This document shows, piece by piece, positions 4,436 to 40,378 of a DNA stretch of 64,000 nucleotides. The translations under genes were made by a program, and so were the position numbers. A model generated the notes under the pieces. The model did no database searches and was not told the DNA's origin. It saw only the letters and a program-made list of their open reading frames with translations. Location of the stretch: positions 226,158 through 290,157 of IMG/VR virus record IMGVR_UViG_3300024308_000302; one strand, written 5' to 3'. How positions within the stretch are numbered: position 1 is the stretch's first letter; the number at the start of each line of letters is the position of its first letter.

Positions 4436-5932
4436 TTATATTTTATTTTTTATCTTATTTTTAATTGTCTTCCCATCGTCAGTGCTCTTATAAAGTTCAA
4501 ATGCTTCATCGTAAGATTTAGCTTCTGTAATAGCAATAGCCTTTAAGAAGTCTCCATTTTGATATAGAGATAACAAATTTGGATAATTGTTTTTTATCAA
4601 GTTCGCTAACTCATCTGGTTTAATATATGTCAATAAACTACTGTTTGCAGTATGATCTAAATGAAGGACAATTTTATGTTCTTGAAGGTAATCTAAAACA
4701 GGAGCAATATAGGCAAGTTTTTCTTCTGCTGTAGCAGTATAGGATAAAGCTGAATCAATTACAAAACAAACTTTCAAATTATCTCGTTGTTCAATACATA
4801 AATTATGGTAATACATTTTAAAGAAACTATTATCACCAGAAATGTGAATGTAGTTATAATCACTCTCTAAATATCTTTTAGATAAAGAATGATAACCATA
4901 AGTTAGACTTGGTTCGGCTGACAAAATAGAAATCTTGGGATCTATTAAATCAAAATCAGCAGTCGTTTCAGACAAAGGAATACCAGAAGCTCTTATAGTG
5001 TTATCATCAATAACAATTTCCATCATAGAGTCTGAAACGGATTTAAACCATTCAGGACGATTATTTTCAATAAAACTAATAAAATCATTAAGAACTGGTG
5101 TATTTAGCATATCTTCTTCACTTTTAGCATTTGCCATTACACCAAGAACTACAGATTCTTTTGCCTGAAACAAATAGAAGTAATCATCAAATTCTTTATA
5201 GTAGTCATCCATAAGCTCTATATAAGTTTGATCAGCATCTATAACAGTAATGTTAAATTTATGCTCAAATTTATGTGGTCTTAAATTAGCATCTAAAGGA
5301 ATTTCTTTGTCCAACAAATCAATAATATTCTTAACGTAGAAGCTAACAGATTGAGCACTGACATCATTACTATTCATTACATCCTTAAAGCAATTAAAAG
5401 TATGACACAATTTAACAATAGGTAAATTTTGAATAGTATATGAAAAGTCAGTAAGATGATTTTTTTCACTAAATGCTAAATTGAATTTAGATATAAAATC
5501 TTTAAAACCATCACTATCATCTAATATATCATTAATAATTTTAACCACTTGTTTATCTGAATTATTTAAAATCGGAATTGCATTAAAATCGTCGTTACGT
5601 GTTGGCTTTATTGAATTTAAAGTATCAGCAAGAGCTAAAGAATATTCATAGGCTTCATTTTCGTCTTCTGTTGGTTGCTTGGAATTTAACTTGGACTCAA
5701 TAAATTTACCGTGTTCATTTTCTGTTAAAATTCTTTTTGATCTGTAACTTATGGCTAAAGGATTATCTTCTAAATCAGTTTTGGATAAACTGAGATCATA
5801 AAAGTCCTTTAATAATGTTGTTTTATAGAATTTTAAAGTTGACAATTCATTGAAATAGTTGTCATTAATAGAATTAGACAATTTAAATTCTTCACGCAAT
5901 TTTATAAAATCTTCTGCTTTTGCTTTTTTCAT
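4436..5932 (-). CDS. hypothetical protein with basic C-terminal tail
   Basis: 498 aa; ATGA overlap with upstream gene; ends KTIKNKIKNKI*. Confidence 0.85.
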   Translation of the reverse strand: MKKAKAEDFIKLREEFKLSNSINDNYFNELSTLKFYKTTLLKDFYDLSLSKTDLEDNPLAISYRSKRILTENEHGKFIESKLNSKQPTEDENEAYEYSLALADTLNSIKPTRNDDFNAIPILNNSDKQVVKIINDILDDSDGFKDFISKFNLAFSEKNHLTDFSYTIQNLPIVKLCHTFNCFKDVMNSNDVSAQSVSFYVKNIIDLLDKEIPLDANLRPHKFEHKFNITVIDADQTYIELMDDYYKEFDDYFYLFQAKESVVLGVMANAKSEEDMLNTPVLNDFISFIENNRPEWFKSVSDSMMEIVIDDNTIRASGIPLSETTADFDLIDPKISILSAEPSLTYGYHSLSKRYLESDYNYIHISGDNSFFKMYYHNLCIEQRDNLKVCFVIDSALSYTATAEEKLAYIAPVLDYLQEHKIVLHLDHTANSSLLTYIKPDELANLIKNNYPNLLSLYQNGDFLKAIAITEAKSYDEAFELYKSTDDGKTIKNKIKNKI

Positions 5933-7767
5933 GATAATCTCTGTTTTAATTTAACTTTGTTTTCTTTAATGACACCATTTTCTTTTAAGTAACTTTCAAG
6001 TGAATCAATGGTACTTTCTGTCATTGAGTGTTCTTCTCTGTTTGCATAAAGAGCTGCTTTTTGTGCAATTTCAATTTGTTTAGTAATATCTGAACCATAT
6101 AACTCATCATCATTTTTTAAGTGTTGAGCATAAGAAGAACCAGATTGATCAAGTGTAAAACCAATCATGGAATAAATGTCAGTAGAGCGTTTATTAAAGT
6201 CACATAGAATGTATTGTCGATTATTAACGTCCGTTACATACTGATCAAAATAATCCTCATCACGAACTATACACCAAGATTTTGAGCCGAAAGCAACACA
6301 TTGTTCATAATCTTTAACTTCAAAAACATAAATGCCATTATCAGCATATAACTTATTCAAACCAAATGATTCTAATTTTAAATCAATAACTTCTGGCGTA
6401 AATTGATCGAAATAATTCAATAATCCAGTTAGCATATTAATGACATCTTCATTGTTTTTCATGGCTGCAATTTTCTTACCAACAAAAGTTTGAAGTTGTG
6501 ATGAAGTAACTTTATTATCATACAATGATTTAAAATGTGGTTCGGTTTCTTCATTGAAGTGATGTTTATATTTTGAACTCAAAATAGTATAAGCAAATTG
6601 TTTTATTTTGTTTTTATATACAATATTATTAATTTTATCATCAATACCTTCAAAATTTTTATCTTTCAAAGAGTTTAAATCAAAATTATATTGTTTCAAA
6701 ACCGGGTAGTGCTCTAACAATGAATGAACTGTCTTGATAGCGTTTTCAACACCATCTTCATGTATCTTGTTTTTAAAGAATGGAATATGAGATGGTTTCT
6801 TTCTTAGAATAAATGAAACTGCATCACTATGAACATCACGATTAAATTGTTCTAATTCTTTGTTATTAGTGATTGTGTTATAAACTCCATTCTTTAAATA
6901 AGCAATGCTATTATCATTAAAAACTAAAACCTTATTTATTTTTTGAGAGGATGTAAGTTCAAGTGTAGCAAAGACTTCCTCAGAAATATTTTTAGTATGT
7001 ATAAACTTTTCTAAAGAGTTATCACTAGGAATTTTTGATTCTTGTTCTATGAATTGAACAGCCTGAGATATCAAATATGTAGGATCTAATTTGGTGATTT
7101 CGTTTTTTACTGTCTGAATATAATTATTATTAGCAGATTCATACTTATGATACGAATCATAAAAATCTTTAATATCTGGTATTGCATCAACTAATTTATT
7201 AATTGATTTTATAATGTACCCCTTATCTTCTTCATGTAAAAAAGATTTAGACAATTGTTCATTTAAAACATAATATGAGAATAAGAATTTATTAATCAAG
7301 ACATAGTTCTTTTGAAGATCAGCAGCAAAATCTTCAACTATTTCGCGTTTAGTAATCAAATCATCAGTTATAGATTCATCAAAATGATCAAACTCTTCCA
7401 TCTTTTCTAAATACAAGTTATACCATGCTTTATTTAACTCTTTATTATTTTTAACAACATCACGTACTTGCATTTTTTTAGTGTAATCTGGAGCAACTTT
7501 GCTATAATGATCAACAGCATCAGCAGTTGATTCAAATTTGATATGATCAGTCTCTTTTATTATATTTAAGATATTATCTAATCTATTTATGGTTTCAGAT
7601 AAAGGAACTGCGTGTTCATTGACAGAGTTTACTTTATTCTCTTTGAAGAAAGGTATAAATGTTAATTCGTTATATTTTAATTTAGCAGAACTGTAACTCC
7701 AAAGAGAACCACCAACTCTTAATTCATTAAGGCTATCAATTTTACTTAAAATTTCTTCAAGATTCAT
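5929..7767 (-). CDS. hypothetical protein, possible PcfJ-like C-terminal domain
   Basis: ~612 aa; FEVKDYEQCVAFGSKSWCI motif; basic tail KVKLKQRLS*. Confidence 0.75.
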   Translation of the reverse strand: MNLEEILSKIDSLNELRVGGSLWSYSSAKLKYNELTFIPFFKENKVNSVNEHAVPLSETINRLDNILNIIKETDHIKFESTADAVDHYSKVAPDYTKKMQVRDVVKNNKELNKAWYNLYLEKMEEFDHFDESITDDLITKREIVEDFAADLQKNYVLINKFLFSYYVLNEQLSKSFLHEEDKGYIIKSINKLVDAIPDIKDFYDSYHKYESANNNYIQTVKNEITKLDPTYLISQAVQFIEQESKIPSDNSLEKFIHTKNISEEVFATLELTSSQKINKVLVFNDNSIAYLKNGVYNTITNNKELEQFNRDVHSDAVSFILRKKPSHIPFFKNKIHEDGVENAIKTVHSLLEHYPVLKQYNFDLNSLKDKNFEGIDDKINNIVYKNKIKQFAYTILSSKYKHHFNEETEPHFKSLYDNKVTSSQLQTFVGKKIAAMKNNEDVINMLTGLLNYFDQFTPEVIDLKLESFGLNKLYADNGIYVFEVKDYEQCVAFGSKSWCIVRDEDYFDQYVTDVNNRQYILCDFNKRSTDIYSMIGFTLDQSGSSYAQHLKNDDELYGSDITKQIEIAQKAALYANREEHSMTESTIDSLESYLKENGVIKENKVKLKQRLS

Positions 7768-7841
7768 GTTTAAATTATTATTTGATTGTATTTTTATATT
7801 GTAACATATAAACAAGAAAAAAATAGACTAAAAAAAACAAT

Positions 7842-8593: not shown

Positions 8594-9283
8594 TTAATTG
8601 GCATCAGGTGTAATAACCTTGCCTACATATCGTTTACCAGTTGAATAATCAGCATAAAGCTCAAATACAACATAGGTATCGTGGTCTTTCAAATTATCCA
8701 GAATAAAACTTTTATCATTATGGTTTGGAACAAGAGGCCCAACCATTTCTTGAAGTGTTTCATTAGGCAAAATTGGAAGTAAATGGCTGTTAAAGTTATC
8801 TCTCTTAGTACATCCATAACCTTTATAGAGATTTTTACTATCAATAATGAATGTATTTAGATCTTCATCTGCTTTAAATTTCAGATAAACAAACTTGTCT
8901 TTGATAAGTTGATCACCATCATATAGAAAGTTTGAAGCAAAAGATTGAGCATCTACTTTTTTGCGGAAAGTATATTCATTAAAAAGATCAACAAGTGCTT
9001 GGCTATCAAATTCCGAAAATCCTCTTTGAACCAAATACTCTATTTTTTTTGAAAAAGAAGTATGAAAGTCAAAAGTTTCAAAATAATTATAACAAAGATC
9101 AAGATGAATTCTAAAACGATCTTTAATAATAAAGTCACTAGCAAAACACAAAATGGTAGATTCTGGTGTAGGCGAATGAAGGAATGCAACAGCAATGCTG
9201 CTATCTTGTTTACCTAAAATAACATTCAGCTTGGTAAGGAATTCGTTTTGTTTTTCATGAACTTCTGAAATATTTAGGCTCAT
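8594..9283 (-). CDS. hypothetical protein, paralog of 44007..44735
   Basis: EFLTKLNVILGKQDSSIA vs EFIGRLKAILNRGDSSIA. Confidence 0.8.
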   Translation of the reverse strand: MSLNISEVHEKQNEFLTKLNVILGKQDSSIAVAFLHSPTPESTILCFASDFIIKDRFRIHLDLCYNYFETFDFHTSFSKKIEYLVQRGFSEFDSQALVDLFNEYTFRKKVDAQSFASNFLYDGDQLIKDKFVYLKFKADEDLNTFIIDSKNLYKGYGCTKRDNFNSHLLPILPNETLQEMVGPLVPNHNDKSFILDNLKDHDTYVVFELYADYSTGKRYVGKVITPDAN

Positions 9284-10457: not shown

Positions 10458-10730
10458 ATAGAAATCCTATAATAAAAAACAATAAATAGCAGTCTATCAT
10501 TATACTACTTATAAATTTCCTTCACATTATAACAAAAAATGGTAGATTTGTAAACAATTATAAAGAATATCACCTGTAAAATATTTGAAGGCAACTAGAA
10601 GCTTAGCCAAAGTAATAAAAAAGATGATTATATAAAGAACACTTTTGTTAAATGTAAAATTTTAATTTAACTTATTGATTGAATATAAAAAGTAGATATG
10701 ATTAAATAATTAAAGACAAAGGTAAAAGAA

Positions 10731-11042
10731 ATGGAATATATAAACGCTAACGGAATAAATAATAACTCAAATCAACCACAACCAGAAAATGAAGAAGTAG
10801 ATAAATGTATTAAATATTTAAAAAATATAATAGAAAATGATGTATATAACAAAACCACTAGCAGCTATGCTCTTAAACATTTAATAGACAAAGAAGAGAC
10901 ATATGTCTCAAATGGTGCATTTATAGAAGCATTGCGTATATTAAAAATGAGTTATGAAAGATGTTCTGAAGAGTCGCCAAATGTTTGGGTAAAATTTGAT
11001 ATAAAAGATTTAGAAAGAGCAATAAAAGAATACAAAAGTTGA
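10731..11042 (+). CDS. hypothetical protein, SYxLKH..YVSNGxFI family
   Basis: TSSYALKH..YVSNGAFIEA, a motif I recall from small phage/plasmid proteins. Confidence 0.7.
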   Translation: MEYINANGINNNSNQPQPENEEVDKCIKYLKNIIENDVYNKTTSSYALKHLIDKEETYVSNGAFIEALRILKMSYERCSEESPNVWVKFDIKDLERAIKEYKS

Positions 11043-11047
11043 TAAAA

Positions 11048-11155
11048 AAGAGGCTTCGGCCTCTTTTTATCATCACTCTACATTATTTTTTCTTCTTGCT
11101 ACGCTCATCAAACTTCTCAAATGTAGCATTTGCATATATAGAAAGATAATTTAAA
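11048..11155 (-). repeat. diverged copy of ligase 3' end + terminator + junction motif
   Basis: reads FEKFDERSKKKK* vs FGKFDSRNKNKK*; terminator aagaggcttcggcctctt; flanked by catatatagaaagat. Confidence 0.75.
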
Positions 11156-11159
11156 AAAA

Positions 11160-11741
11160 TTATGCAATTAGATCATATTTTAATTTATGATCATTGATTT
11201 TCTGTTTAAACATTTCAGTCATTTCATCTAATGTTAAAAGATGAAGATGTTCTTCTAGCTCATACCAACATCTAAAATCTTTTAAATAAGAGATAATCAT
11301 TTCTTTATCACAAGGACCAAGAAGAATATAATAAATTTTATACTTTTCACGACATGAAAACTTCTCAGTAATATACTCAGAATATTTTTTTAATTCTACT
11401 ACAAGTCTACCAATAAGTTCTTCATTTGCTTTTTTAACATTCACCGTTTTTTCTGAAATAGATTTAACTTCAATATTTAAATAATAATCCGCAAAATCGG
11501 CAATTTTAAATGCTTCTGACGACCTGAAATTACTTTCTCTCTTGTGTAACCGCACTTGGCTGTCTAAAACAAATGGAAATCTGTTGAAATATTCAGCTTT
11601 TACAGTCTCACCTTTTTTTAAAGCCATCTGATATAATTTTACTAATTTATCACGTTGATTAATAAAACAACCAATTTCTTTAAGCCTTTTTTCAACAATC
11701 TTCTCTGCTTTCTTTCCATTTATATACGAAACTTTAGACAT
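11160..11741 (-). CDS. putative PD-(D/E)XK nuclease
   Basis: N-terminal GKKAE helix; ADFADYYLNIEVKS. Confidence 0.5.
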   Translation of the reverse strand: MSKVSYINGKKAEKIVEKRLKEIGCFINQRDKLVKLYQMALKKGETVKAEYFNRFPFVLDSQVRLHKRESNFRSSEAFKIADFADYYLNIEVKSISEKTVNVKKANEELIGRLVVELKKYSEYITEKFSCREKYKIYYILLGPCDKEMIISYLKDFRCWYELEEHLHLLTLDEMTEMFKQKINDHKLKYDLIA

Positions 11742-11910
11742 TAGAATATAAACCTTTATATCTTGAATTTGAAAGTATTATAGCATGAAGACTGTTTTCA
11801 TGCTACTATTTTTTGTTGTTGGCTGAAATAAGATAGTCCATAGATTTAGTATTGAGTTGATTTTTTTTATTTTGATAATAAAATTTTAATAATTAATAAA
11901 AGAATAAAAG

Positions 11911-13041
11911 ATGACAGAAATTAAGAATATAAGAATATTATTAGAATACTATTTTAATAATTTTAAAGATGAATACGCAATAGCTACTTCAGTATTAATG
12001 TATGTAGATACAAGTAGCGAATTTGCAATAAAAAAAGAAATTGAGAAAAGAGTTGATCTTTTTGACAATAAAGATATAGACATTAAAGATAAATGTGAAA
12101 AAGTTTTTAATATTTTAGAAGATATAAAAGAAAATATTGGATTAAATTTTGGTAAAAACGAACAAATATTATATAATGAAAATAAATTTACATCAAGCTT
12201 CAAATTGCTTTCTGATTTTTGCAAAGGTGCTTCAATAATAAATTCTGCATATTCCAAGGAATATATAGATATGACAGGAAAAGGATATAAAAGAATGTTG
12301 TCACAATTATTGACAAAAATCAATAACAACTTAATTGAAGTCATTATTGAAAAAAAGAATAATAATCTTGATAGTATAGTAAAATCAGAAACTGATTATA
12401 TAAGTAATATGAAAAGTAATAAAACAAATAATGGCATAAAATTGCTTAATTATCATGCTTCAATAGAAAGGGATAGAAAAGAGTATATAGAAAATGAAAT
12501 AAAAAAAATAAATAATGATAATAAAATAATTGGTGAAGCAATAGGTTGTTTTTTGTTAAACTATCATAAAACATACGAATTTGAAATAGATCATTATACC
12601 GAATTAATAAAACACTTAAGAAAAAATATAGAGCCAAAAGAAAGAACTGAATTTGAAGGTGTGATACAAGCATCAGATTATGCTATTAGCTATTGGGCTA
12701 CTAATTTTGACAAAATAAAAAGTGAAGAACAAAAAATAAATGATGAATTTGAAAGTTGGAATTTAAAAAGCTTTCTTAGCTCTGTAGTTGCAGGAAAATT
12801 ATTGACACAGAAAAATATTGACGAATTAACTTTTATAAGTGAGTTAAGGTTTATTAACAACAATAACGGGCAAGAAATGAACAGTATTGAAGTTAAAAAA
12901 ATATTTGATAAAGCAATGGAAGAAAAACAAAAAATTAAACAAAAAGTAAAAGTAAAGGAACCAGAAATACTAAAAGAAATAGAAAAAAAAGAAGAAAAAA
13001 TAGGTTTTATAAAAAGAGGCATAAATTGGTTTTATAAATAA
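11911..13041 (+). CDS. hypothetical helical protein (cassette cargo)
   Basis: 376 aa, very A-rich; ends KIGFIKRGINWFYK. Confidence 0.75.
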   Translation: MTEIKNIRILLEYYFNNFKDEYAIATSVLMYVDTSSEFAIKKEIEKRVDLFDNKDIDIKDKCEKVFNILEDIKENIGLNFGKNEQILYNENKFTSSFKLLSDFCKGASIINSAYSKEYIDMTGKGYKRMLSQLLTKINNNLIEVIIEKKNNNLDSIVKSETDYISNMKSNKTNNGIKLLNYHASIERDRKEYIENEIKKINNDNKIIGEAIGCFLLNYHKTYEFEIDHYTELIKHLRKNIEPKERTEFEGVIQASDYAISYWATNFDKIKSEEQKINDEFESWNLKSFLSSVVAGKLLTQKNIDELTFISELRFINNNNGQEMNSIEVKKIFDKAMEEKQKIKQKVKVKEPEILKEIEKKEEKIGFIKRGINWFYK

Positions 13042-13043
13042 AG

Positions 13044-13200
13044 AAGAGGCAGAAGCCTCTTATGTTTTTGGCAGTTTCTCCGAATATTCACGCTTCTTCT
13101 AAGAAGTGGTGACACCCAAATAACCGTCCAAGGTTACATCATTTTTTGTGCTTGTTGCGACTGTCAAACTTACCAAAGCATGGAAGCCCGAAATCCTTTC
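13044..13200. repeat. 157 bp direct repeat of 15865..16020 (ligase 3' end, UTR, terminator)
   Basis: identical except 2 substitutions and a 1-nt indel. Confidence 0.97.
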
Positions 13201-13471
13201 ATATGTAGAAAGATCATGTAAAGTTTTATTTATCATACTCATTAAAATATTGAATTTACTTACTGTACAGAATATCTTAAAACTAAGATGTATCTGATAT
13301 ACAACATATTTTTATAAATATATTTTTGAAATTAATTAATGAAGATTATAATTATAAAAAAAGGAAAATAAAATCAATGAAATGCACTATTGATTTTCAA
13401 AAAAATAAAAAGTATCATAGTAAAAACACTAATTTTTTTTAGATAAGTATAGAAATAATTAAGGAGATATT

Positions 13472-13660
13472 ATGACAACTAAAGCAGAAATATATAACGA
13501 AAAAGATGAGTTAATAAATACTTTTGAAGGTGTTAATTTAATTCCAATAAAAGATGGAAGTTCAATATTCGCAAATAGTTCATCGCAAAGACCAGTATTA
13601 TATTATAATTTAAAACCGGGCCATTATATTAAGAATATATTAACATCAATAACTAAATAA
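13472..13660 (+). CDS. small hypothetical protein (cassette cargo)
   Basis: 62 aa, AAGGAG RBS. Confidence 0.7.
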   Translation: MTTKAEIYNEKDELINTFEGVNLIPIKDGSSIFANSSSQRPVLYYNLKPGHYIKNILTSITK

Positions 13661-13681
13661 ACAAGATAAAAATAGAATAAA

Positions 13682-13795
13682 AAAGAGGCTACTGCCTCTT
13701 TTTTTTACCATCATACTATATCAATTTTTCTTCTTATAACGTTCATAAAAATTGAAGAATGAAGCAAAACTAAAATCTTTAAATATGTCAAAAGT
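13682..13795 (-). repeat. diverged copy of ligase 3' end + terminator + junction motif
   Basis: 13777..13721 reads DFSFASFFNFYERYKKKN*, same 19-codon register as DFGLPCFGKFDSRNKNKK*; flanked by atatgtcaaaag. Confidence 0.65.
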
Positions 13796-13805
13796 AATTA
13801 AACTT

Positions 13806-15443
13806 TTAAATAACATCAATAACAAGATTAATTGCAAAAGAATTATTAAGAAGATCTGATTTTAAGTCAGGATAACCAGCATAAATATTATTTGTTATAG
13901 CCACTCTAATTGGTTCATATAAATTATCTTCTAAATATGTTTTTAAATTATCATCTTGTATCGAATCTATGATTTCGTCAAATAAATCATTAAAATCTTC
14001 TAAGCAATAATTTAAGATCTCGCTTTTACTAATAGTTGAAAGAAAAGGAATATTGAAATTTTTCAAATTTAAAGAATTTCCACCTTTGGACAAATAAATA
14101 TAAACACAATTTTTAAAAGAATAAAATAATTTATAGTATAAAATATAATTGACTAATTTTTTTCGATAAACAGCTTTCATTTTATTACTGATAACTTTTC
14201 TTTTGGCTGCTTTATATTTATTAGTAGAGAAAAAGAGTTCCAAGAAACTTGGGTTATCTTTCAAAGAATCAGAATAGGCATTAAATAAATCATAAATAAT
14301 ATCTATGTTATTTATTTTTTTGAGCATATTTTTAGGACAATAATATATGCCAATTTTATTTGACGACAAAGAATCGCAATTATTGTTGATATTTTTAAGA
14401 TGCCATTTTTTGTTTTGTTTTTTTAATTCATTAAAATAAGTATTTTTTGCTTTAATTTCTTTATTTTTTTCTTTCATTGTTTTTAAAATGGTGCTCTCTT
14501 TATATATTGGTGGATTACACAGTATACAAACGTTATTTCTGGCATATGATTTTCTTATGCCTTTTATTGAACAATTAACACAATTAATAGTTTTTAACTT
14601 TAAAAATTTTCTACAAATGTAACAAGAAAAAGAATCTGATGATCTTGATAATTTTATCAGGGTTTTATAATCATGATAATGCTCTCCAAAAAAATTAACA
14701 CAATTTGGACATTTAACTTTATCGATTACAACAGGTATTCTGAAAATAACATCATTATATGAAGAATGATTAAAAAGAATAATAAAGTGTTTTAAATCAT
14801 CATAAAGAAAATAAGTAGGCAATTTATTTATGCTTAAATGTTTATTTATTGTATACAAAGGCATTAAAGAAACAGCAGCTACAAAATAATTAGAACGTGC
14901 CAAATTGGTAAGATTATTAATCATATCTTTCCTAAAATATAAAAAATAATCTATTAAAAATTGTTTTTTCTTACTCAAAACAAAATAACAAACAATATAG
15001 TCATTTAAAATTTTATTTAAATCATTTTTAATATTTTCTACATTGAAAAGGTATGAAGTGTGGCTGTCAGCATTTCGCTTTGAATTAATATCATAAAATA
15101 ACAAATTGAAATCATTATAATTAATTGGATTTTTTTCGAAAAAATCATTACCATGTAGACTCTTAACAATATCAATTAGAATCGATGCATTTACTGATCT
15201 TATGGTATTACCTGTTTCAGAAGAGATATTAGCGTTTACATCTTTTTCAACAACTAAGCCTCGTAATGTGAGTTCACAATAATCATGTAAAGATGAATAA
15301 AGCTCTGTATAAAATAAATTAATATTACGCTTCCCAATATAACCAGAATCTATAAATGCTGAAATATTGAAAAAATTCTCAAAGAAAATGGCATTAGCTT
15401 TATTATAGAAAAGATCTGGATCTGAATTAAACATTTTACTCAT
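13806..15443 (-). CDS. putative HEPN-domain / zinc-ribbon protein
   Basis: AGGAGG RBS before MSKMF; RNADSH (R-N-x3-H); CPNC, CYIC, CVNC, CILC. Confidence 0.55.
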   Translation of the reverse strand: MSKMFNSDPDLFYNKANAIFFENFFNISAFIDSGYIGKRNINLFYTELYSSLHDYCELTLRGLVVEKDVNANISSETGNTIRSVNASILIDIVKSLHGNDFFEKNPINYNDFNLLFYDINSKRNADSHTSYLFNVENIKNDLNKILNDYIVCYFVLSKKKQFLIDYFLYFRKDMINNLTNLARSNYFVAAVSLMPLYTINKHLSINKLPTYFLYDDLKHFIILFNHSSYNDVIFRIPVVIDKVKCPNCVNFFGEHYHDYKTLIKLSRSSDSFSCYICRKFLKLKTINCVNCSIKGIRKSYARNNVCILCNPPIYKESTILKTMKEKNKEIKAKNTYFNELKKQNKKWHLKNINNNCDSLSSNKIGIYYCPKNMLKKINNIDIIYDLFNAYSDSLKDNPSFLELFFSTNKYKAAKRKVISNKMKAVYRKKLVNYILYYKLFYSFKNCVYIYLSKGGNSLNLKNFNIPFLSTISKSEILNYCLEDFNDLFDEIIDSIQDDNLKTYLEDNLYEPIRVAITNNIYAGYPDLKSDLLNNSFAINLVIDVI

Positions 15444-15864
15444 AAAACCTCCTAAATTAAAATTTATATCCAATATTACATAATATATCATAAATAAAGT
15501 AGTCTTTAAAAAAATAGAGTCTTTTTGAACTATGAAAATAGGTAATAAAAATAAAACCAACTATTTTTATATCTTTATATCATATAAATTAATAAAAAAT
15601 ATACAAAAAAGACATATAACGTGTAATATATTATAAATAAAGTAAATTGTTAATACAAATATATTATTGAAAAATGAAAATATTTTTTACGTTTTTTATA
15701 AATCTAAACGAAGATTTATAAAGTTAATTTATATATAATAATGCTTATTTTATAAGCTTATTTCTTAAGTTTTTGAACAAATACATATAAAACAGCAATT
15801 TTAGAACATTTTTTATCAATATATGTAAAAATAAAAACGTGAAGTTTTTTTAATAGAAATAAAA

Positions 15865-16020
15865 AAGAGGCCGAAGCCTCTTATGTTTTTGGCAGTTTCT
15901 CCGAATATTCACGCTTCTTCTAAGAAGTGGTGACACCCAAATAACCGTCCAAGGTACATCATTTTTTGTTCTTGTTGCGACTGTCAAACTTACCAAAGCA
16001 TGGAAGCCCGAAATCCTTTC
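15865..16020. repeat. 156 bp direct repeat of 13044..13200
   Basis: covers last 62 nt of ligase gene, 3' UTR and terminator. Confidence 0.97.
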
Positions 16021-16612
16021 TCCTTAATTTAGCATAACGCCCATCAGGATGGTGGAAAACAAGTCCTTCTTCGTTTTCAAACTTGTCTTCGAAAAGTTTT
16101 TTCAAACCTTCAAAAGAGAAGTCAGTCACTTCAAACGCAACACTACCATGTTCCCAGAGTTCGTGGCGAGTAAGGTTGTAGGGGTTGCCATTAACCTTTG
16201 GGCCAACAAGTTCGTAGGTTTTGCCATCCTTCAACTCTCCAGAATTTGCAAGAGCCTCAAGGTGAAACTTGTCCTCTGGACCTTCACCAACAGGAACCCA
16301 GTGTGGGAAATGCAGGCTATGAGCAGCAGGCTTAGCTTCACAAGGAATAGCACCTGCTGGAACCTCATTGAACATATGGTCTTCTGGTACAAACTTATCG
16401 CCCAATTTACGAGCCAATTTCGAGAAATTCGATTTCAGCTTGCGGTCAAAGCGTTTAAACAGTTTGCCATCCTTGAAGTAGGCAGACGAACCATCAAACT
16501 TGATAGTAGCCTTGCCTTCACCACGAACAACCCATTCCGCACCCGGAGTAACAACATCGGTAGCAAGATCAGTATTACGGTCAATCACGAACAGAGTTTT
16601 GATTTTTTTCAT
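15959..16612 (-). CDS. DUF5565 / C12orf29-like ATP-dependent (RNA) ligase
   Basis: KFDG adenylation motif, TYELVGPKVNGNP, EGLVFH..AKLRRKDFG. Confidence 0.75.
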   Translation of the reverse strand: MKKIKTLFVIDRNTDLATDVVTPGAEWVVRGEGKATIKFDGSSAYFKDGKLFKRFDRKLKSNFSKLARKLGDKFVPEDHMFNEVPAGAIPCEAKPAAHSLHFPHWVPVGEGPEDKFHLEALANSGELKDGKTYELVGPKVNGNPYNLTRHELWEHGSVAFEVTDFSFEGLKKLFEDKFENEEGLVFHHPDGRYAKLRRKDFGLPCFGKFDSRNKNKK

Positions 16613-16692
16613 GTTAAATCTCCTAAATAGATTAAAGTAGTTTTCGAATCCAACCGCCTCTATTTAAGGGTTTCCCCTCTGTTTGTGAAGCT

Positions 16693-16721
16693 AGTATAGC
16701 AAAACACGACCTATTGTGCAA
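16693..16721 (-). promoter_or_regulatory. sigma70-like promoter of ligase gene
   Basis: TTGCAC-17 nt-TATACT with extended -10 TG. Confidence 0.7.
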
Positions 16722-16754: not shown

Positions 16755-17402
16755 TCAAATAATTAACATCCTGAGTGTAATTAGATTATTTTCAAATTCA
16801 CTAGTATTAATACGATAAGCACCATCAAAGTACCATTCTGGAAACAATTCCTTTGTAATTTCTTTATCATCATTGAGAAATACTTCAAGAAGCCTAAATT
16901 CATCATCTAATGGACAAAGCATATTACGATGCTTAGTAACGTTCAAAACAATATCTTGACTTGATTTTGATTTAAGATAATGAAGCGATTGATATTCAAA
17001 GTTGCTATCATATGAAATTGAGATTTTGTAACCTAACATGCCAGATTTAGAGCATCTTTTTACAATCGTATAAGATAAATCGACATTTGATATAATACCA
17101 TTATTGTCAGTAGTAACTATACAATTACTTCCAAAAACAATATTACTATTAAGCTGTTTTAAAAAATGAGAAATAGGCAATATCGGACTTAAACCAGTTA
17201 GCTCGATTTTTTGATTGTTGTAGGCATAAAACTTATCAAAATTTTTGATATTCTGTTGTTCGCTCATAAAAGAACTGTCAAATTTATTGAATACCAATCG
17301 TGCAATATTGCTTACAAAAGATTGAGCTTGTTTCTTTTTTTTCATAGCTGCATCATAGTTTTCTTGATAAACACTATAATTTGATTTTAAGGTAGGCGTC
17401 AT
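16755..17402 (-). CDS. hypothetical protein with C-terminal signature, related to 55936..56898
   Basis: ELFPEW..AYRINTSEFENNLITLRMLII*. Confidence 0.8.
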   Translation of the reverse strand: MTPTLKSNYSVYQENYDAAMKKKKQAQSFVSNIARLVFNKFDSSFMSEQQNIKNFDKFYAYNNQKIELTGLSPILPISHFLKQLNSNIVFGSNCIVTTDNNGIISNVDLSYTIVKRCSKSGMLGYKISISYDSNFEYQSLHYLKSKSSQDIVLNVTKHRNMLCPLDDEFRLLEVFLNDDKEITKELFPEWYFDGAYRINTSEFENNLITLRMLII

Positions 17403-31107: not shown

Positions 31108-31186
31108 TGGATGCGAGAGTGGGATTCGAACCCACGATCTCCAGCTTATGAGGCTGGCGAGAACGGCCTGACTTCTCTATCTCGCT
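31108..31186 (-). tRNA. tRNA-Met(CAT), initiator-like
   Basis: cloverleaf; CCAGC-CTCATAA-GCTGG; A1:A72 mismatch, A11:U24; encoded CCA. Confidence 0.9.
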
Positions 31187-31199
31187 ACAAAGCGTAATT

Positions 31200-31276
31200 T
31201 GGTCGGAGTGGCAAGATTCGAACTTGCGGCATCTTGCTCCCAAAGCAAGCGGTCTACCGGGCTGACCTACACTCCG
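31200..31276 (-). tRNA. tRNA-Pro(TGG)
   Basis: CGGAGTG acceptor, CTTGC-TTTGGGA-GCAAG, TTCGAAT loop, CCA. Confidence 0.95.
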
Positions 31277-37087: not shown

Positions 37088-37171
37088 TGGTGCCCGGAGC
37101 CGGACTCGAACCGGCACGACTTTCGTCGGAAGATTTTAAGTCTTCTGTGTCTACCATTTCACCATCCGGGC
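37088..37171 (-). tRNA. tRNA-Leu(TAA)
   Basis: GCCCGGA acceptor, GAAGA-CTTAAAA-TCTTC, long variable arm, CCA. Confidence 0.95.
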
Positions 37172-38529: not shown

Positions 38530-40378
38530 ATGAACTACTCCGCCCTGAAGGACGAAGTTTCTTGGTTCGGAACCAAGTCTTCTCGCTGACGTTCATTGTC
38601 AACTTCAAATAAAGCTATCAGCTTCATTCGCACGGTTTCTCTTTTCATCTTTCTTGGCACGTATTGGCCATTTTTTAACTCATGAAAAGCTAATCGAAGA
38701 ACTTCTTCGAATATTCTGTTTCTTATATTCTTGCAAGCATTATTATCTGCATCATCTATATGACCACATGCATTACAAGTAAAACTTCTTCCTTTTCTAA
38801 CTGTATGCTCCACGCATTTACAGTTAGAACAAGTTTTAGAAGTATAGCTTGGTGTGGTCAGATGAACTCTGATGCCTTTGTTATTGGCTTGCTCTTTAAA
38901 CCAATCTTTGATACTTGAAAGTCTCAATAATCTAATTAACTTTGAATATTTTACATTCAAAGTTTCATCTTTAATAAAAGAAGCTTTACATTGAGACAAA
39001 TTCAAATCTTCAAGTACAATATCGGTAATGCCATTTTTAATTAAGTCTTTTAATATTGTCGATATTAAAGACTTGAAATGGAATTCAACACCTAATAATA
39101 GTTTATTGAATTTCTTTTGTTCTATTGTTGATAATTGTTTGAATCCTTTGTTCTCAAAGGATTTTAATTTTTCTACAATTGCTTCTATATAACTTCTATC
39201 ATAATCTTTAAGTTCTTCACGATCATGAAAAGCAATTGTACAAAAATTAGAAGCAACATTTAAATCAATACCACAAATTTGTTTTTTATTTATAACACTA
39301 TCTTTTTCTAATGGTTTAAAATATTCTTTATCATCTTCATAAGTCAAACCAATATCAAGATGATTTTTGCTATTCAAACGGACAGTATGAATAGCATTAA
39401 GGTTAAAATTGTTTATATTTTGGTGATATTTAGAATTGAAGGCTAAAGGAACATGAATGTGTTCCTTACCAATTCTAAAATTATACCAATATTTATACTC
39501 ATTTGATTCATCAATATAAATATGAGAATGTTTAGTTTGACCAATTTGTGGTATTTTCATGTAAGAGCCAGTTGAATATACAATTGGCTCTTTCATATAT
39601 GACAATATTCTTTGTTTTCTATTTATAAGTAATTGTCTAACTCTATTCCAATAAGGTTTTTTCCTTAATGCTTCAATGCTGTTATTGAAATCAATAACAG
39701 ATTGAAGTTTGAGAGGATCTTTAACTTCTAAAGACTTTAATGAAGAATCAAGGCTTGATTCTTCAATAAACATCAACCAGTTCATTATTTTAGTTAAAGA
39801 AGAATTTCTTGAAATAAAGGTGGTGTCTTTGACATCTCCTTTTTTATGTAAAATTTGACCATCTTTTGAAGTTACATTACGTTTATAGTAAGTAATTTTA
39901 AATTCTTTTTGGAGAATAAACTTATTGTTCGAAATAAGTTTATCCATCCAATTAGAATAGAAGTCCATAGATTGATGAAATATTTTTTGAATTTCCCAAG
40001 AATAGAGATTAGGGGTTTTAAATTGCTTAAAACGAGAAGCCAGAACTTTTTTAGAATCTTCATTACAAAGCATTGCTTTGTGATTGAAGATATAGTATGA
40101 AATATTGTTTTTAAAGTTTTTAACAAAATCAAAATGTTGGATCAGGGTATTTTTCTTCTTATGATTGAGAATCGACGAAGAAGAAATACGTTTAGTTTTG
40201 ATATTTTTTTTATCAGAAGATCCAAAAGCCATAAGATTCCTTAAAATATATGCTTGCAAATTATAGACCAAGAGAAATAAAAAAGCAAGCAAAAAATGTA
40301 AGAAATCAAAAAAGAAGTAAATTTTTATCCCCGACCTGAAGGAAGAGGTTTTAAATTTTATAATTTGATTTCAATAGG
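38530..40378 (-). mobile_element. tnpB-only IS200/IS605-family element (IS1341-like)
   Basis: subterminal hairpins aaaacctcttccttcaggtcgggga (LE) and gaaacttcgtccttcagggcggag (RE); inserted 3' of TTAT, ends TCAT; no TSD; no tnpA. Confidence 0.85.
38535..40232 (-). CDS. tnpB: TnpB RNA-guided endonuclease (565 aa)
   Basis: RuvC GIDLN / LEDL / DADNNA; YTSKTCSNC..CNACG zinc finger. Confidence 0.9.
   Translation of the reverse strand: MAFGSSDKKNIKTKRISSSSILNHKKKNTLIQHFDFVKNFKNNISYYIFNHKAMLCNEDSKKVLASRFKQFKTPNLYSWEIQKIFHQSMDFYSNWMDKLISNNKFILQKEFKITYYKRNVTSKDGQILHKKGDVKDTTFISRNSSLTKIMNWLMFIEESSLDSSLKSLEVKDPLKLQSVIDFNNSIEALRKKPYWNRVRQLLINRKQRILSYMKEPIVYSTGSYMKIPQIGQTKHSHIYIDESNEYKYWYNFRIGKEHIHVPLAFNSKYHQNINNFNLNAIHTVRLNSKNHLDIGLTYEDDKEYFKPLEKDSVINKKQICGIDLNVASNFCTIAFHDREELKDYDRSYIEAIVEKLKSFENKGFKQLSTIEQKKFNKLLLGVEFHFKSLISTILKDLIKNGITDIVLEDLNLSQCKASFIKDETLNVKYSKLIRLLRLSSIKDWFKEQANNKGIRVHLTTPSYTSKTCSNCKCVEHTVRKGRSFTCNACGHIDDADNNACKNIRNRIFEEVLRLAFHELKNGQYVPRKMKRETVRMKLIALFEVDNERQREDLVPNQETSSFRAE

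What the first reader, a model, noticed from the sequence alone, without database searches (positions are those of the whole stretch)
13193..13224. Conserved junction motif at cassette ends (CTTTC-ATATGTA-GAAAG)
Seen: where identity to the gene stops (13200/16020), the copy continues atatgtagaaagatcatgtaaa. The other copies continue atatatagaaagataatttaaa (11134-11155) and atatgtcaaaag (13783-13794); the latter has the same 5-nt spacing from the aatc of the Asp codon. At 13196-13212 this forms 5-bp inverted arms around a 7-bp spacer. The gene itself continues tccttaattt, with TTA-AGG-AGA codons that are unusual for this otherwise CGT/CGC-rich gene. Inference: this is the element-side arm of the recombination site.
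Basis: partly seen in the sequence, partly recalled or inferred. Interest (0 to 1): 0.65.

Follow-up and report, generated by a model that had tools for sequence, protein, structure and literature searches.

The report
Recombination-site arm of ligase-targeting mobile cassettes
The short motif is the conserved end of small mobile DNA elements that insert, one after another, into the tail of an RNA-ligase gene; full-size relatives elsewhere carry three tyrosine-recombinase genes, and the host is a huge, uncharacterised, virus-like prokaryotic genome.

Summary
A 217-aa RLIG1/DUF5565 RNA-ligase gene (15959-16612, minus strand) is followed by three more copies of its last about 19 codons, each with its own terminator. 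Each older copy is preceded by a conserved AT-rich end, on the gene strand roughly AACTTTACAT, 8 nt, TACATAT, then a 6-nt spacer.

An empty/occupied pair from one study (L032/L087) shows an 8,669-bp insertion exactly at this point. It carries three tandem tyrosine-recombinase-fold genes, a 125-aa gene and a type IIG restriction-modification gene. This architecture matches SE, GInt and Tn554-type elements.

Joining the two ends of that element gives a 12-bp imperfect inverted repeat around a 6-bp spacer. In five loci the 6-nt spacer at the ligase junction equals the one at the right end, although it differs between loci.

The window's cassettes have no recombinase. The one next to the ligase carries a cargo gene 80% identical in DNA to the cargo of a recombinase-bearing element. 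Contigs from two other studies lack exactly the 2,820-bp block bounded by the matching spacers.

This is a new variant of a known kind, and it sits in an unusual host replicon.

The parts
15959..16612 (-). Target gene: a 217-aa RNA ligase of the RLIG1/DUF5565 family. Its last 19 codons (KDFGLPCFGKFDSRNKNKK) are supplied by the proximal cassette.
   Evidence: Pfam PF17720 3.3e-9 and PHROG 14301 'RNA ligase' 5e-47. The KxDG residues are invariant in alignment A2.
16015..16020 (-). Left junction (looks like attB/attL). The 6-nt spacer is GAAAGG on the gene strand, inside codons R198-K199-D200.
   Evidence: Identity to the tail copy starts here. The spacer equals the one at 13195-13200. The AGG/AGA/TTA codon anomaly lies just 5' of it.
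15837..16014 (-). Left end of proximal cassette C. It holds tail copy 1 (in use, stop at 15959-15961), a 3' untranslated stretch, the terminator at 15865-15882 and the subterminal box AACTTCACGT at 15837-15846.
   Evidence: Terminator. The box matches the AACTTTACRT box found just after the left-end terminator of the recombinase-bearing elements L087, L146, L147 and L148. Strain contigs L011 and L012 share this stretch only down to 15864.
13806..15443 (-). Cargo gene of cassette C: a 545-aa protein of unknown function with several CxxC pairs.
   Evidence: 69% aa and 80% nt identity to the gene that follows the recombinase trio and the 125-aa gene in L147. No hit in Pfam, PHROG, PADLOC or NCBIfam.
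13783..13803 (-). Right end of cassette C. The arm is degenerate (CTTTTGACATAT on the gene strand) and so is the box. The spacer TTAAAG lies at 13777-13782.
13679..13776 (-). Tail copy 2 (KDFSFASFFNFYERYKKKN, stop) with its terminator at 13679-13704. This is the left end of cassette B.
   Evidence: tblastn and translation. Terminator. 72% identical to the tail of relative L006.
13472..13660 (+). Cargo of cassette B: a 62-aa ORF of unknown function with a Shine-Dalgarno-like AAGGAG upstream.
   Evidence: No family hit.
13195..13225 (-). THE FINDING: the right end of cassette B. It comprises the 6-nt spacer GAAAGG (13195-13200), the core arm CTTTCTACATAT (13201-13212) and the box AACTTTACAT (13216-13225), all read on the gene strand.
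   Evidence: It is near-identical to the right end of L087, AACTTTACATTATTTTTCTACATAT.
13201..16020 (-). A 2,820-bp block (cassettes C and B) bounded by identical GAAAGG spacers. It is present or absent in natural populations.
   Evidence: A contig of run X7 joins 13134 to 15955 with no mismatches. Run X4 has the ligase body joined to the tail-3 allele and almost no depth over 13228-15750. Run X3 and the source runs carry the full array.
13033..13194 (-). Tail copy 3 (KDFGLPCFGKFDSRNKHKK, stop) with its 3' stretch and the terminator at 13044-13061. It is 97-98% identical to tail 1 and forms the left end of cassette A.
11160..13041 (.). Cargo of cassette A: a 376-aa ORF (11911-13041, +) of unknown function and a 193-aa ORF (11160-11741, -) that looks like a PD-(D/E)xK nuclease.
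   Evidence: No family hits. For the 193-aa ORF the Atlas features and structure point to restriction-endonuclease, Hjc and PDDEXK_11-like clusters; these are leads only.
11128..11155 (-). Right end of cassette A: the arm CTTTCTATATAT and TTTAAAT in place of the box. The spacer GCAAAT (11128-11133) is out of register with the ligase tail.
   Evidence: About 50 nt (11140-11191) are 87% identical to the right end of the L147 element.
11041..11127 (-). Tail copy 4 (..NATFEKFDERSKKKK, stop at 11083-11085) with its terminator hairpin. It is the oldest tail and 93% identical in aa to the tail of relative L006.

Best explanation
The motif is the right-end core arm, with an adjacent subterminal box, of a family of site-specific integrative elements driven by several tyrosine recombinases. 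The architecture is that of SE, GInt and Tn554-type elements. The target is the codons ..(R/N)-K-D.. near the 3' end of an RLIG1-type RNA-ligase gene.

A circular element carries a joint site: arm (..TTTCTACATAT), a 6-bp spacer, then a second arm (ATATGTGTAAAA in full-size elements). Strand exchange within the 6-bp spacer (nnAARG, followed by AT of the Asp codon) inserts the element. The element's own left end supplies a replacement ligase tail and a terminator, so the gene stays open. The old tail is left behind, directly after the element's right-end arm.

Repeated events stack up. The window holds three such cassettes (C, B and A) and four tails. None of the three carries a recombinase. They are non-autonomous derivatives that either depend on recombinases supplied in trans or are now fixed.

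Shown by computation:
- the anatomy;
- the empty/occupied pair;
- the recombinase genes;
- the inverted repeat with a 6-bp spacer;
- the matching spacers;
- the presence/absence polymorphism;
- the cargo homology.

Inferred:
- catalysis by these recombinases;
- exchange within the spacer;
- cassettes with ligase-like tails arising by recombination between two right-end-type sites in an array;
- present-day mobility.
For: 1. Four tails in direct order, each with a terminator.
2. The motif is far above chance and found only at tail junctions.
3. L087 equals L032 plus an 8,669-bp insertion. The flanks are 100% identical and the two junctions share the core ATAAGGAT.
4. The insertion encodes proteins of 394, 561 and 591 aa with PF00589 hits (3e-16, 4e-4, 6e-5), a 125-aa ORF and a type IIG restriction-modification-like gene.
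5. The same trio lies directly after the ligase in L146, L147, L148, L176 and L177, which come from other samples. L178 has a trio with the same gene layout, but the contig begins just upstream and a ligase there was not shown.
6. The reconstructed joint of L087 is TTTTCTACATAT, ATAAGG, ATATGTGTAAAA: 10 of 12 arm positions are complementary around a 6-bp spacer.
7. In five loci the 6-nt spacer at the left junction equals the one at the right end, while it differs between loci: GAAAGG, ATAAGG, AAAAAG, GGAAAG, GTAAAG.
8. The window's 545-aa cargo gene matches the cargo of the trio-bearing L147 element at 80% nt, and the left-end box is retained at 15837-15846.
9. Contigs from two independent studies lack exactly the 2,820-bp block between the matching spacers.
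10. An identical alternative tail (KDMCKMERNGHKYLNPFSEEFKNTFGK) sits on ligase bodies that are 86% and 75% identical to the window's.
11. Tandem recombinase-less cassettes with tail copies recur in L176, L035 and L039.
12. The published criteria for SE termini and the published GInt layout fit (PMC10214605, PMC5385486).
Against: - No PF00589 or PF00239 gene lies in the window or in the 290-kb record. The rest of the 1.54-Mb contig could not be read.
- The window cassettes carry ligase-like tails at their left ends instead of the ATATGTGTAAAA arm, so each site has only one good arm. Their competence is untested.
- The site at 11134 is out of register and has an odd spacer. The site at 13783 has a degenerate arm and box.
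- Gain or loss of the 2,820-bp block could also come from homologous recombination between the 168-bp repeats. The X7 joint lies inside the repeat.
- No circle-junction joint ('goes back') was seen. Only assembled contigs could be laid, and contigs drop rare forms.
- Family affiliation (SE or GInt) is unresolved.
Confidence: 0.8

Rival explanations
1. Fossil scars. The junctions are genuine former recombination sites, but the window's cassettes are now immobile and the motif has no present function in this genome.
For: No recombinase in the 290-kb record. The arms at 13783 and the register at 11134 are degenerate. The cassettes lack the second arm. No circle joints appear in contigs.
Against: The site at 13195-13225 is nearly identical to the right end of a recombinase-bearing element, and its spacer matches the left junction exactly. 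The block it bounds is polymorphic among near-identical strains. A trio could lie elsewhere on the 1.54-Mb contig or arrive on a co-resident element.
Confidence: 0.35
2. Homologous or unequal recombination between ligase tails and shared terminator hairpins of co-resident genomes built the array. On this view the motif is passenger sequence with no role.
For: The 168-bp repeats are 97-98% identical. The terminator hairpin recurs about 40 times in 290 kb. L011 and L012 diverge from the window right after the terminator. The X7 joint lies inside the repeat.
Against: It does not explain why one 25-nt end abuts tails that are only about 60% alike, or why it recurs in contigs whose ligases are 47-84% identical. 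It also leaves unexplained the spacer identity within loci, the inverted repeat in the joint and the recombinase genes in the full-size insertions.
Confidence: 0.07
3. Homing-type cassettes. A nuclease encoded in the cassettes cuts the conserved ligase motif, and repair copies the cassette in. The candidates are the PD-(D/E)xK-like 193-aa ORF in the window and the CapR/DUF723-domain protein in L039.
For: Nuclease-like cargo in cassette A. CapR/DUF723 domains in the L039 cargo. The target lies in a conserved ligase motif.
Against: Cargo differs between cassettes, and most cassettes have no nuclease-like gene. Homing does not leave tandem target-tail copies or matching 6-nt spacers. The full-size elements carry tyrosine recombinases.
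Confidence: 0.04
4. The motif is a regulatory signal, such as a promoter, an operator or part of a terminator, that was conserved along with the tail copies.
For: It is AT-rich, intergenic and lies next to stop codons of cargo genes.
Against: The TTTACA and TACATAT hexamer-like parts are only about 9 nt apart, which does not fit a sigma-70 spacing. Promoter-like sites in the region are at background: 40 found against 40.6 expected. The position of the motif is fixed relative to the crossover point, not relative to any gene start.
Confidence: 0.03

Closest known systems
[quoted passage not shown]
   Same: - Four-gene core in the same order: an ordinary tyrosine recombinase, a recombinase-fold protein with an incomplete catalytic set, a large tyrosine recombinase and a small protein.
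- Imperfect inverted repeats at the termini that flank a 6-bp spacer in the joint.
- Strong target specificity.
- Small size with cargo.
   Different: - Sequence homology to SE proteins could not be tested, as no reference sequences were at hand.
- SEs are known from Gammaproteobacteria; here the host is an uncharacterised virus-like replicon.
- The target is the 3' end of an RNA-ligase gene, and the element replaces the tail.
- Tandem arrays of recombinase-less cassettes are not described for SEs.
- Strand bias and the absence of an empty site were not tested.
[quoted passage not shown]
   Same: - Three recombinase-type genes and a small gene at the 5' end, then cargo, then a short AT-rich 3' end.
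- Insertion at 3' ends of genes, changing the C-terminus.
- Short imperfect flanking repeats and 6-7-nt staggered cuts.
- Restriction-modification or defence cargo (also PMC10121019).
- ORF1 to ORF3 are colinear homologues of trio operons on Pseudomonas and Burkholderia plasmids.
   Different: - In GInts the third protein (GinC) is described as lacking catalytic residues. Here the third has R, HxxR, H and Y, and the second lacks the box-I Arg.
- The GInt authors found no conserved feature at the 3' end; here there is a defined arm and box.
- I did not verify that the plasmid operons used for comparison are GInts in the authors' sense.
Tn554 family (TnpA, TnpB, TnpC)
   Same: [quoted passage not shown] Site- and orientation-specific insertion with a 6-bp footprint (as summarised in PMC10214605).
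   Different: Tn554 has no counterpart of the second gene. The hosts are Staphylococcus and Enterococcus. tblastn of ORF3 against plasmids listed no Staphylococcus or Enterococcus records among the genera shown.
Integron cassette arrays, and accretion of cis-mobilisable elements beside integrative elements (for example at the 3' end of fda in Streptococcus thermophilus; from my own knowledge)
   Same: Tandem arrays of recombinase-less modules, each bounded by a recombination site, built at one fixed site by a tyrosine recombinase acting in trans.
   Different: No IntI-type integrase and no attI. The sites are not attC-type hairpins. Each cassette carries a copy of the target gene's tail and a terminator.

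Membership tests
[quoted passage not shown] | Four conserved genes in the order intA, CDS2 (tfp), intB, CDS4 (srap) | tested here: met
   In relatives only: L087, L146, L147, L148, L176 and L178 have about 394 / 552-562 / 566-606 / 121-134 aa genes in one direction. The window's own cassettes have none.
[quoted passage not shown] | IntA and IntB carry the RHRY catalytic residues; the CDS2 product lacks them | tested here: inconclusive
   ORF1 has R, HxxR, H and Y. ORF3 has R285, H413xxR416, H441 and Y450. ORF2 has Phe in place of the box-I Arg but keeps the later R, H and Y. This is read from alignments only.
[quoted passage not shown] | Termini: the split attB is kept in attL and attR; the joint forms imperfect inverted repeats; there is a 6-bp spacer between them | tested here: met
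   L032 against L087: flanks are 100% identical. The joint has 12-bp arms with 10 of 12 positions complementary around ATAAGG. Spacers match in five loci.
[quoted passage not shown] | Sequence homology to SE core proteins | not tested
   No SE reference sequence was available in the collections I could query.
[quoted passage not shown] | Strand-biased circle formation without an empty site | not testable with these tools
   Only assembled contigs could be laid. An empty site exists in the same study as L087 (L032), but that does not show excision.
GInt | A ginABCD-like operon (three integrase-type genes and a short gene) at the 5' end, then cargo, then a short AT-rich 3' end | tested here: met
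   L087, L147 and L176. The right ends are AT-rich and conserved.
GInt | At least one integrase homologous to a GInt integrase at E below 1e-5 (the working criterion of PMC10121019) | tested here: inconclusive
   ORF1, ORF2 and ORF3 match the first, second and third genes of trio operons on P. aeruginosa and B. glumae plasmids at 2e-34, 6e-24 and 1e-10. I could not confirm that those operons are GInts as defined by the authors. ORF4 against their fourth gene is not significant.
GInt | GinC (the third product) lacks catalytic residues | tested here: not met
   The third protein keeps R, HxxR, H and Y, in the plasmid operons as well.
Tn554 family | Two tyrosine recombinases and TnpC only | tested here: not met
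   Three recombinase-fold genes are present.
Integron | An IntI integrase with attI and cassettes ending in attC hairpin sites | tested here: not met
   The best integron-integrase score is 26 bits against a cut-off of 265. The sites consist of an arm, a spacer and a gene tail, not attC.
RIT (recombinase in trio) | Three recombinases RitA, RitB and RitC | not tested
   It differs in having a fourth small gene and two large (over 550 aa) proteins. No direct comparison was made.

The most novel reading that the evidence does not exclude
An integron-like cassette system run by SE/Tn554-type multi-recombinase machinery. Autonomous elements and many recombinase-less cassettes are exchanged and stacked at the 3' end of an RNA-ligase gene in megabase-scale, ORFan-rich, virus-like prokaryotic replicons. 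Each cassette carries a ligase tail, a terminator, cargo and a right-end arm. The cassettes are mobilised in trans and ferry defence-type and other accessory genes.
Probability: 0.35. Interest if true: 0.8.

Novelty: new variant of a known kind. Interest (0 to 1): 0.62.

Why it matters
SE and GInt elements are recently recognised and poorly understood. The GInt authors reported finding no common feature in the GInt 3' end that could serve self-recognition (PMC5385486). This lineage offers several things they lacked:
- defined ends, consisting of a box, a core arm and a 6-bp spacer;
- natural empty, occupied and partly occupied sites;
- non-autonomous cassettes.

Together these make the recombination chemistry and trans-mobilisation directly testable. 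The case would also extend such elements, as far as the papers I read describe them, beyond bacterial chromosomes and plasmids to a huge, virus-like replicon. There they create a hypervariable accessory-gene array without inactivating the target gene.

Tried and rejected
- **Motif scan of IMG/VR.** A degenerate 22-mer gave 51 hits. None lies next to a ligase tail, and the closest (L107) sits inside a long ORF. I treat them all as chance in AT-rich DNA.
- **Relatives in IMG/VR, cultured phages and GTDB genomes.** The ligase has no relative above 53%, 41% and 52% identity respectively. All close relatives came from metagenome and Logan contigs.
- **Recombinase elsewhere on the source contig.** The record is not held.
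- **Integrase or resolvase in the 290-kb record.** None found.
- **Homology of cargo genes between loci by tblastx.** Mostly low-complexity noise. The L039 cargo is unrelated to the window's 545-aa gene.
- **Phage hallmark families (Gp23, NCLDV capsid, Terminase_6N).** No hit, and two of the three controls did not ring either.
- **Joints at 11067/11068, 13413 and 15856-15859 in the laid contigs.** These have 21-26-nt sides and reflect the shared terminator hairpin, so I did not count them.
- **Explanations rejected.** An integron, a homing endonuclease, a promoter or operator, and unequal crossing-over alone; the reasons are under the rival explanations. Xer/dif-type sites were considered but not tested further.

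Full report
**What is in the sequence.** The window is the last 64 kb of a 290,157-bp IMG/VR virus record with 32% G+C. On the minus strand, 15959-16612 encodes a 217-aa RNA ligase of the RLIG1/DUF5565 family (Pfam PF17720; PHROG 14301 'RNA ligase', 5e-47).

Downstream of it, at lower coordinates, lie three further copies of the gene's last 15-19 codons, all in the same orientation:
- Tail 3 at 13033-13200 is 97-98% identical to the live tail, including about 110 nt after the stop.
- Tail 2 ends at 13776 and reads KDFSFASFFNFYERYKKKN.
- Tail 4 ends at 11127 and reads ..NATFEKFDERSKKKK.

Each tail is followed by a GAGGC-N4-GCCTC terminator hairpin. Tails 2 and 4 resemble the tails of other ligase alleles; tail 4 is 93% identical in aa to the tail of relative L006.

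Between the tails lie one or two ORFs with no family hit:
- a 545-aa protein with several CxxC pairs;
- a 62-aa ORF;
- a 376-aa ORF;
- a 193-aa ORF that looks like a PD-(D/E)xK nuclease.

**The observation.** On the gene strand, the sequence directly 5' of tails 3 and 4 is TTTAMATKATCTTTCTAYATATG. It has two matches in the window against none in 100 shuffles, even with two mismatches allowed. A stricter pattern has only four independent hits in 1.2 Mb of related loci, all at tail junctions.

The codon remark is also right. The only AGG, AGA and TTA codons of the gene lie just 5' of the junction.

The 5-bp inverted repeat CTTTC/GAAAG is peculiar to the copy at 13196-13212. It is not kept in the other copies or in relatives, so I do not take it as functional.

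**The decisive comparison.** Two contigs of one study differ by an insertion. L087 positions 1-126 and 8796-8921 are 100% identical to L032 positions 10475-10600 and 10593-10718. L087 therefore carries 8,669 extra bases exactly at the ligase codons N-K-D, and both junctions share ATAAGGAT.

The right end of the insertion reads AACTTTACATTATTTTTCTACATAT. The left end supplies a different ligase tail (KDMCKMERNGHKY...) and a terminator.

The insertion encodes three tandem proteins of the tyrosine-recombinase fold (394, 561 and 591 aa; PF00589 at 3e-16, 4e-4 and 6e-5). It also encodes a 125-aa ORF and a 749-aa type IIG restriction-modification-like protein.

The same trio lies directly after the ligase gene in L146, L147, L148, L176 and L177. 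These come from other samples, and their first recombinase is 59-98% identical to that of L087. L178 carries a trio of the same layout, with a first recombinase 45% identical. Its contig begins just upstream of the trio, so I could not show a ligase there.

The left junction is always ..AARGAT followed by ATGTGTAA.. in the trio-bearing elements. An identical alternative tail sits on ligase bodies that are 86% and 75% identical to the window's, which shows that the tail travels with the element.

**Site anatomy.** Joining the two ends of the L087 element gives TTTTCTACATAT, ATAAGG, ATATGTGTAAAA. This is a 12-bp imperfect inverted repeat (10 of 12) around a 6-bp spacer.

Eleven right ends from six independent loci share the layout: box AACTTTRCAT, about 8 nt, a core arm ending in ACATAT, then 6 nt. 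The box recurs in the same orientation just after the left-end terminator of the trio-bearing elements, and at window 15837-15846.

The strongest signature is the spacer. In five loci the 6 nt at the ligase junction equal the 6 nt at a right end, although they differ between loci:
- window: GAAAGG
- L087: ATAAGG
- L147: AAAAAG
- L176: GGAAAG
- L039: GTAAAG

This is what strand exchange across a 6-bp overlap by tyrosine recombinases leaves behind.

**The window's array.** The window holds no recombinase, and neither does the 290-kb record. Its cassettes are nevertheless derived from the same element family. The 545-aa gene is 69% identical in aa and 80% in nt to the cargo gene that follows the trio and the 125-aa gene in L147. 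The 50 nt before the site at 11134 are 87% identical to the right end of L147.

In the window, the matching GAAAGG spacers are at 16015-16020 and 13195-13200. They bound a 2,820-bp block made of cassettes C and B. Assembled contigs of public runs show this block to be polymorphic:
- A contig of run X7 joins 13134 to 15955 without a mismatch.
- Run X4 has the ligase body attached to the tail-3 allele and almost no depth over the block.
- Run X3 and the source runs carry the whole array.

The simplest history is an X4-like ancestor (ligase, tail 3, cassette A, tail 4) into which a two-cassette circle integrated at the spacer.

Cassettes with ligase-like tails at their left end are what recombination between two right-end-type sites of an array would release. 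That step is an inference. The same block could also be gained or lost by homologous recombination between the 168-bp repeats, and the contigs cannot tell the two apart.

Recombinase-less cassettes with tail copies also occur in L176, L035 and L039. In L176, after the trio element, one cassette carries a DUF285 gene and a further segment with Flp-pilin and prepilin-peptidase genes ends in a right-end-like motif without a recognisable tail.

**Comparison with known systems.** The architecture is that of the multi-recombinase integrative elements reviewed in PMC10214605, namely SEs, GInts and Tn554.

The termini meet the three SE criteria of that paper: the split attB is kept, the joint forms an inverted repeat, and there is a 6-bp spacer.

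The catalytic pattern also resembles the SE order IntA-Tfp-IntB-Srap. ORF1 and ORF3 are complete, and ORF2 lacks the box-I Arg.

The overall layout equally fits GInts. That layout is an operon, then cargo, then an AT-rich 3' end. GInts also insert at a gene's 3' end with a changed C-terminus, and they carry restriction-modification or defence cargo (PMC5385486, PMC10121019). ORF1 to ORF3 are colinear homologues of trio operons on Pseudomonas and Burkholderia plasmids. However, GinC is described as catalytically incomplete, and the third protein here is not.

I therefore file the family as an SE/GInt-type element with unresolved affiliation. The window's units are non-autonomous derivatives of it.

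Three things are new relative to the papers I read:
- the target, an RNA-ligase tail that the element replaces;
- a defined conserved right end with a box repeated at both ends;
- integron-like arrays of recombinase-less cassettes.

**The host.** The host is also unusual. The window's source contig is 1.54 Mb, and relatives sit on contigs of 0.6-2.2 Mb.
- Of 40 window ORFs scanned against Pfam, only 3 had a hit. Of 20 scanned against PHROGs, 2 matched and only the ligase matched a family of known function.
- 87% of ORFs lie on one strand.
- Shine-Dalgarno-like motifs are ten-fold enriched upstream of starts.
- No close ligase relative exists in GTDB genomes.

**Limits.**
- No recombination was observed directly.
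- Only contigs, not raw reads, could be laid.
- The sites at 13783 and 11134 are degenerate or out of register.
- Whether the window cassettes still move is open.

Noticed in passing
whole window; G000 (290,157 bp); L028: The record is called a 'provirus', but it is cut from a 1,539,155-bp metagenome contig (Ga0247725_1000001). Related ligase or recombinase loci sit on contigs of 604 kb, 1.86 Mb and 2.23 Mb. Only 3 of 40 window ORFs have a Pfam hit, and of 20 scanned against PHROGs only the ligase matches a family of known function. 260 of 300 ORFs are on one strand, Shine-Dalgarno-like motifs are enriched ten-fold, and no close relative exists in GTDB genomes. This may be a megabase-scale phage-like or extrachromosomal replicon of unknown kind.
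   Followed up: partly
window 10900-16700: Near-identical DNA occurs in runs of 12 studies labelled subsurface, soil, food, freshwater, plant, silage and groundwater, and in three coded 'organism' runs. That is a wide distribution for an uncharacterised replicon.
   Followed up: partly
window 38535-40292 (-): A 585-aa ORF with a Cas12f1-like TNB domain (TnpB-type, 2e-15). A TnpB/OrfB_IS605 gene also lies near the ligase in L176 (4831-6114).
   Followed up: no
window 31108-31276 and 37088-37171; G000 33-40 kb and 168-184 kb: tRNA-Met, tRNA-Pro and tRNA-Leu genes. The tRNA-Leu has about eight copies, 88-99% identical to one another, scattered through the 290-kb record.
   Followed up: no
G000, about 40 sites, e.g. 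window 11048-11067, 13044-13061, 13679-13704, 15865-15882: One terminator hairpin type (AGAGGC-N3-5-GCCTCT) recurs about 20 times on each strand. Strain contigs L011 and L012 diverge from the window exactly after the hairpin at 15864, so these hairpins may also act as recombination points between strains.
   Followed up: partly
window 4436-7815 (-); L007 12435-19061; G000 211366-212092: A pair of large genes (628 and 498 aa) is present as two tandem pairs in relative L007 and has a 71%-identical partial paralogue elsewhere in the record. No family hit.
   Followed up: no
window 15459-15836: About 375 nt without an ORF lie between the left-end box and promoter-like remnant and the 545-aa cargo gene. 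Full-size elements carry the recombinase operon at this position. No remnant of it was detectable by blastn.
   Followed up: partly
L176 16,800-19,300; L087 5665-7914; L176 14998-16077: Cargo of related elements and cassettes includes a type IIG restriction-modification-like gene, a DUF4238 protein, DUF285 proteins, and an Flp/Fap pilin with a prepilin peptidase A24.
   Followed up: partly
window 13139 versus 15958/15959: A single extra T just after the stop codon, and one coding difference (N to H, 13150 G versus 15970 T), distinguish tail 3 from tail 1. Run X4 carries the tail-3 allele next to the ligase, and run X7 carries a hybrid.
   Followed up: yes
L147 about 16825-16870: The right end of the L147 element (TTTACATTATCTTTCTGCATGT, then AAAAAG) is followed by a terminator instead of a ligase tail, so the old tail has been lost there or the original target differed.
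   Followed up: no
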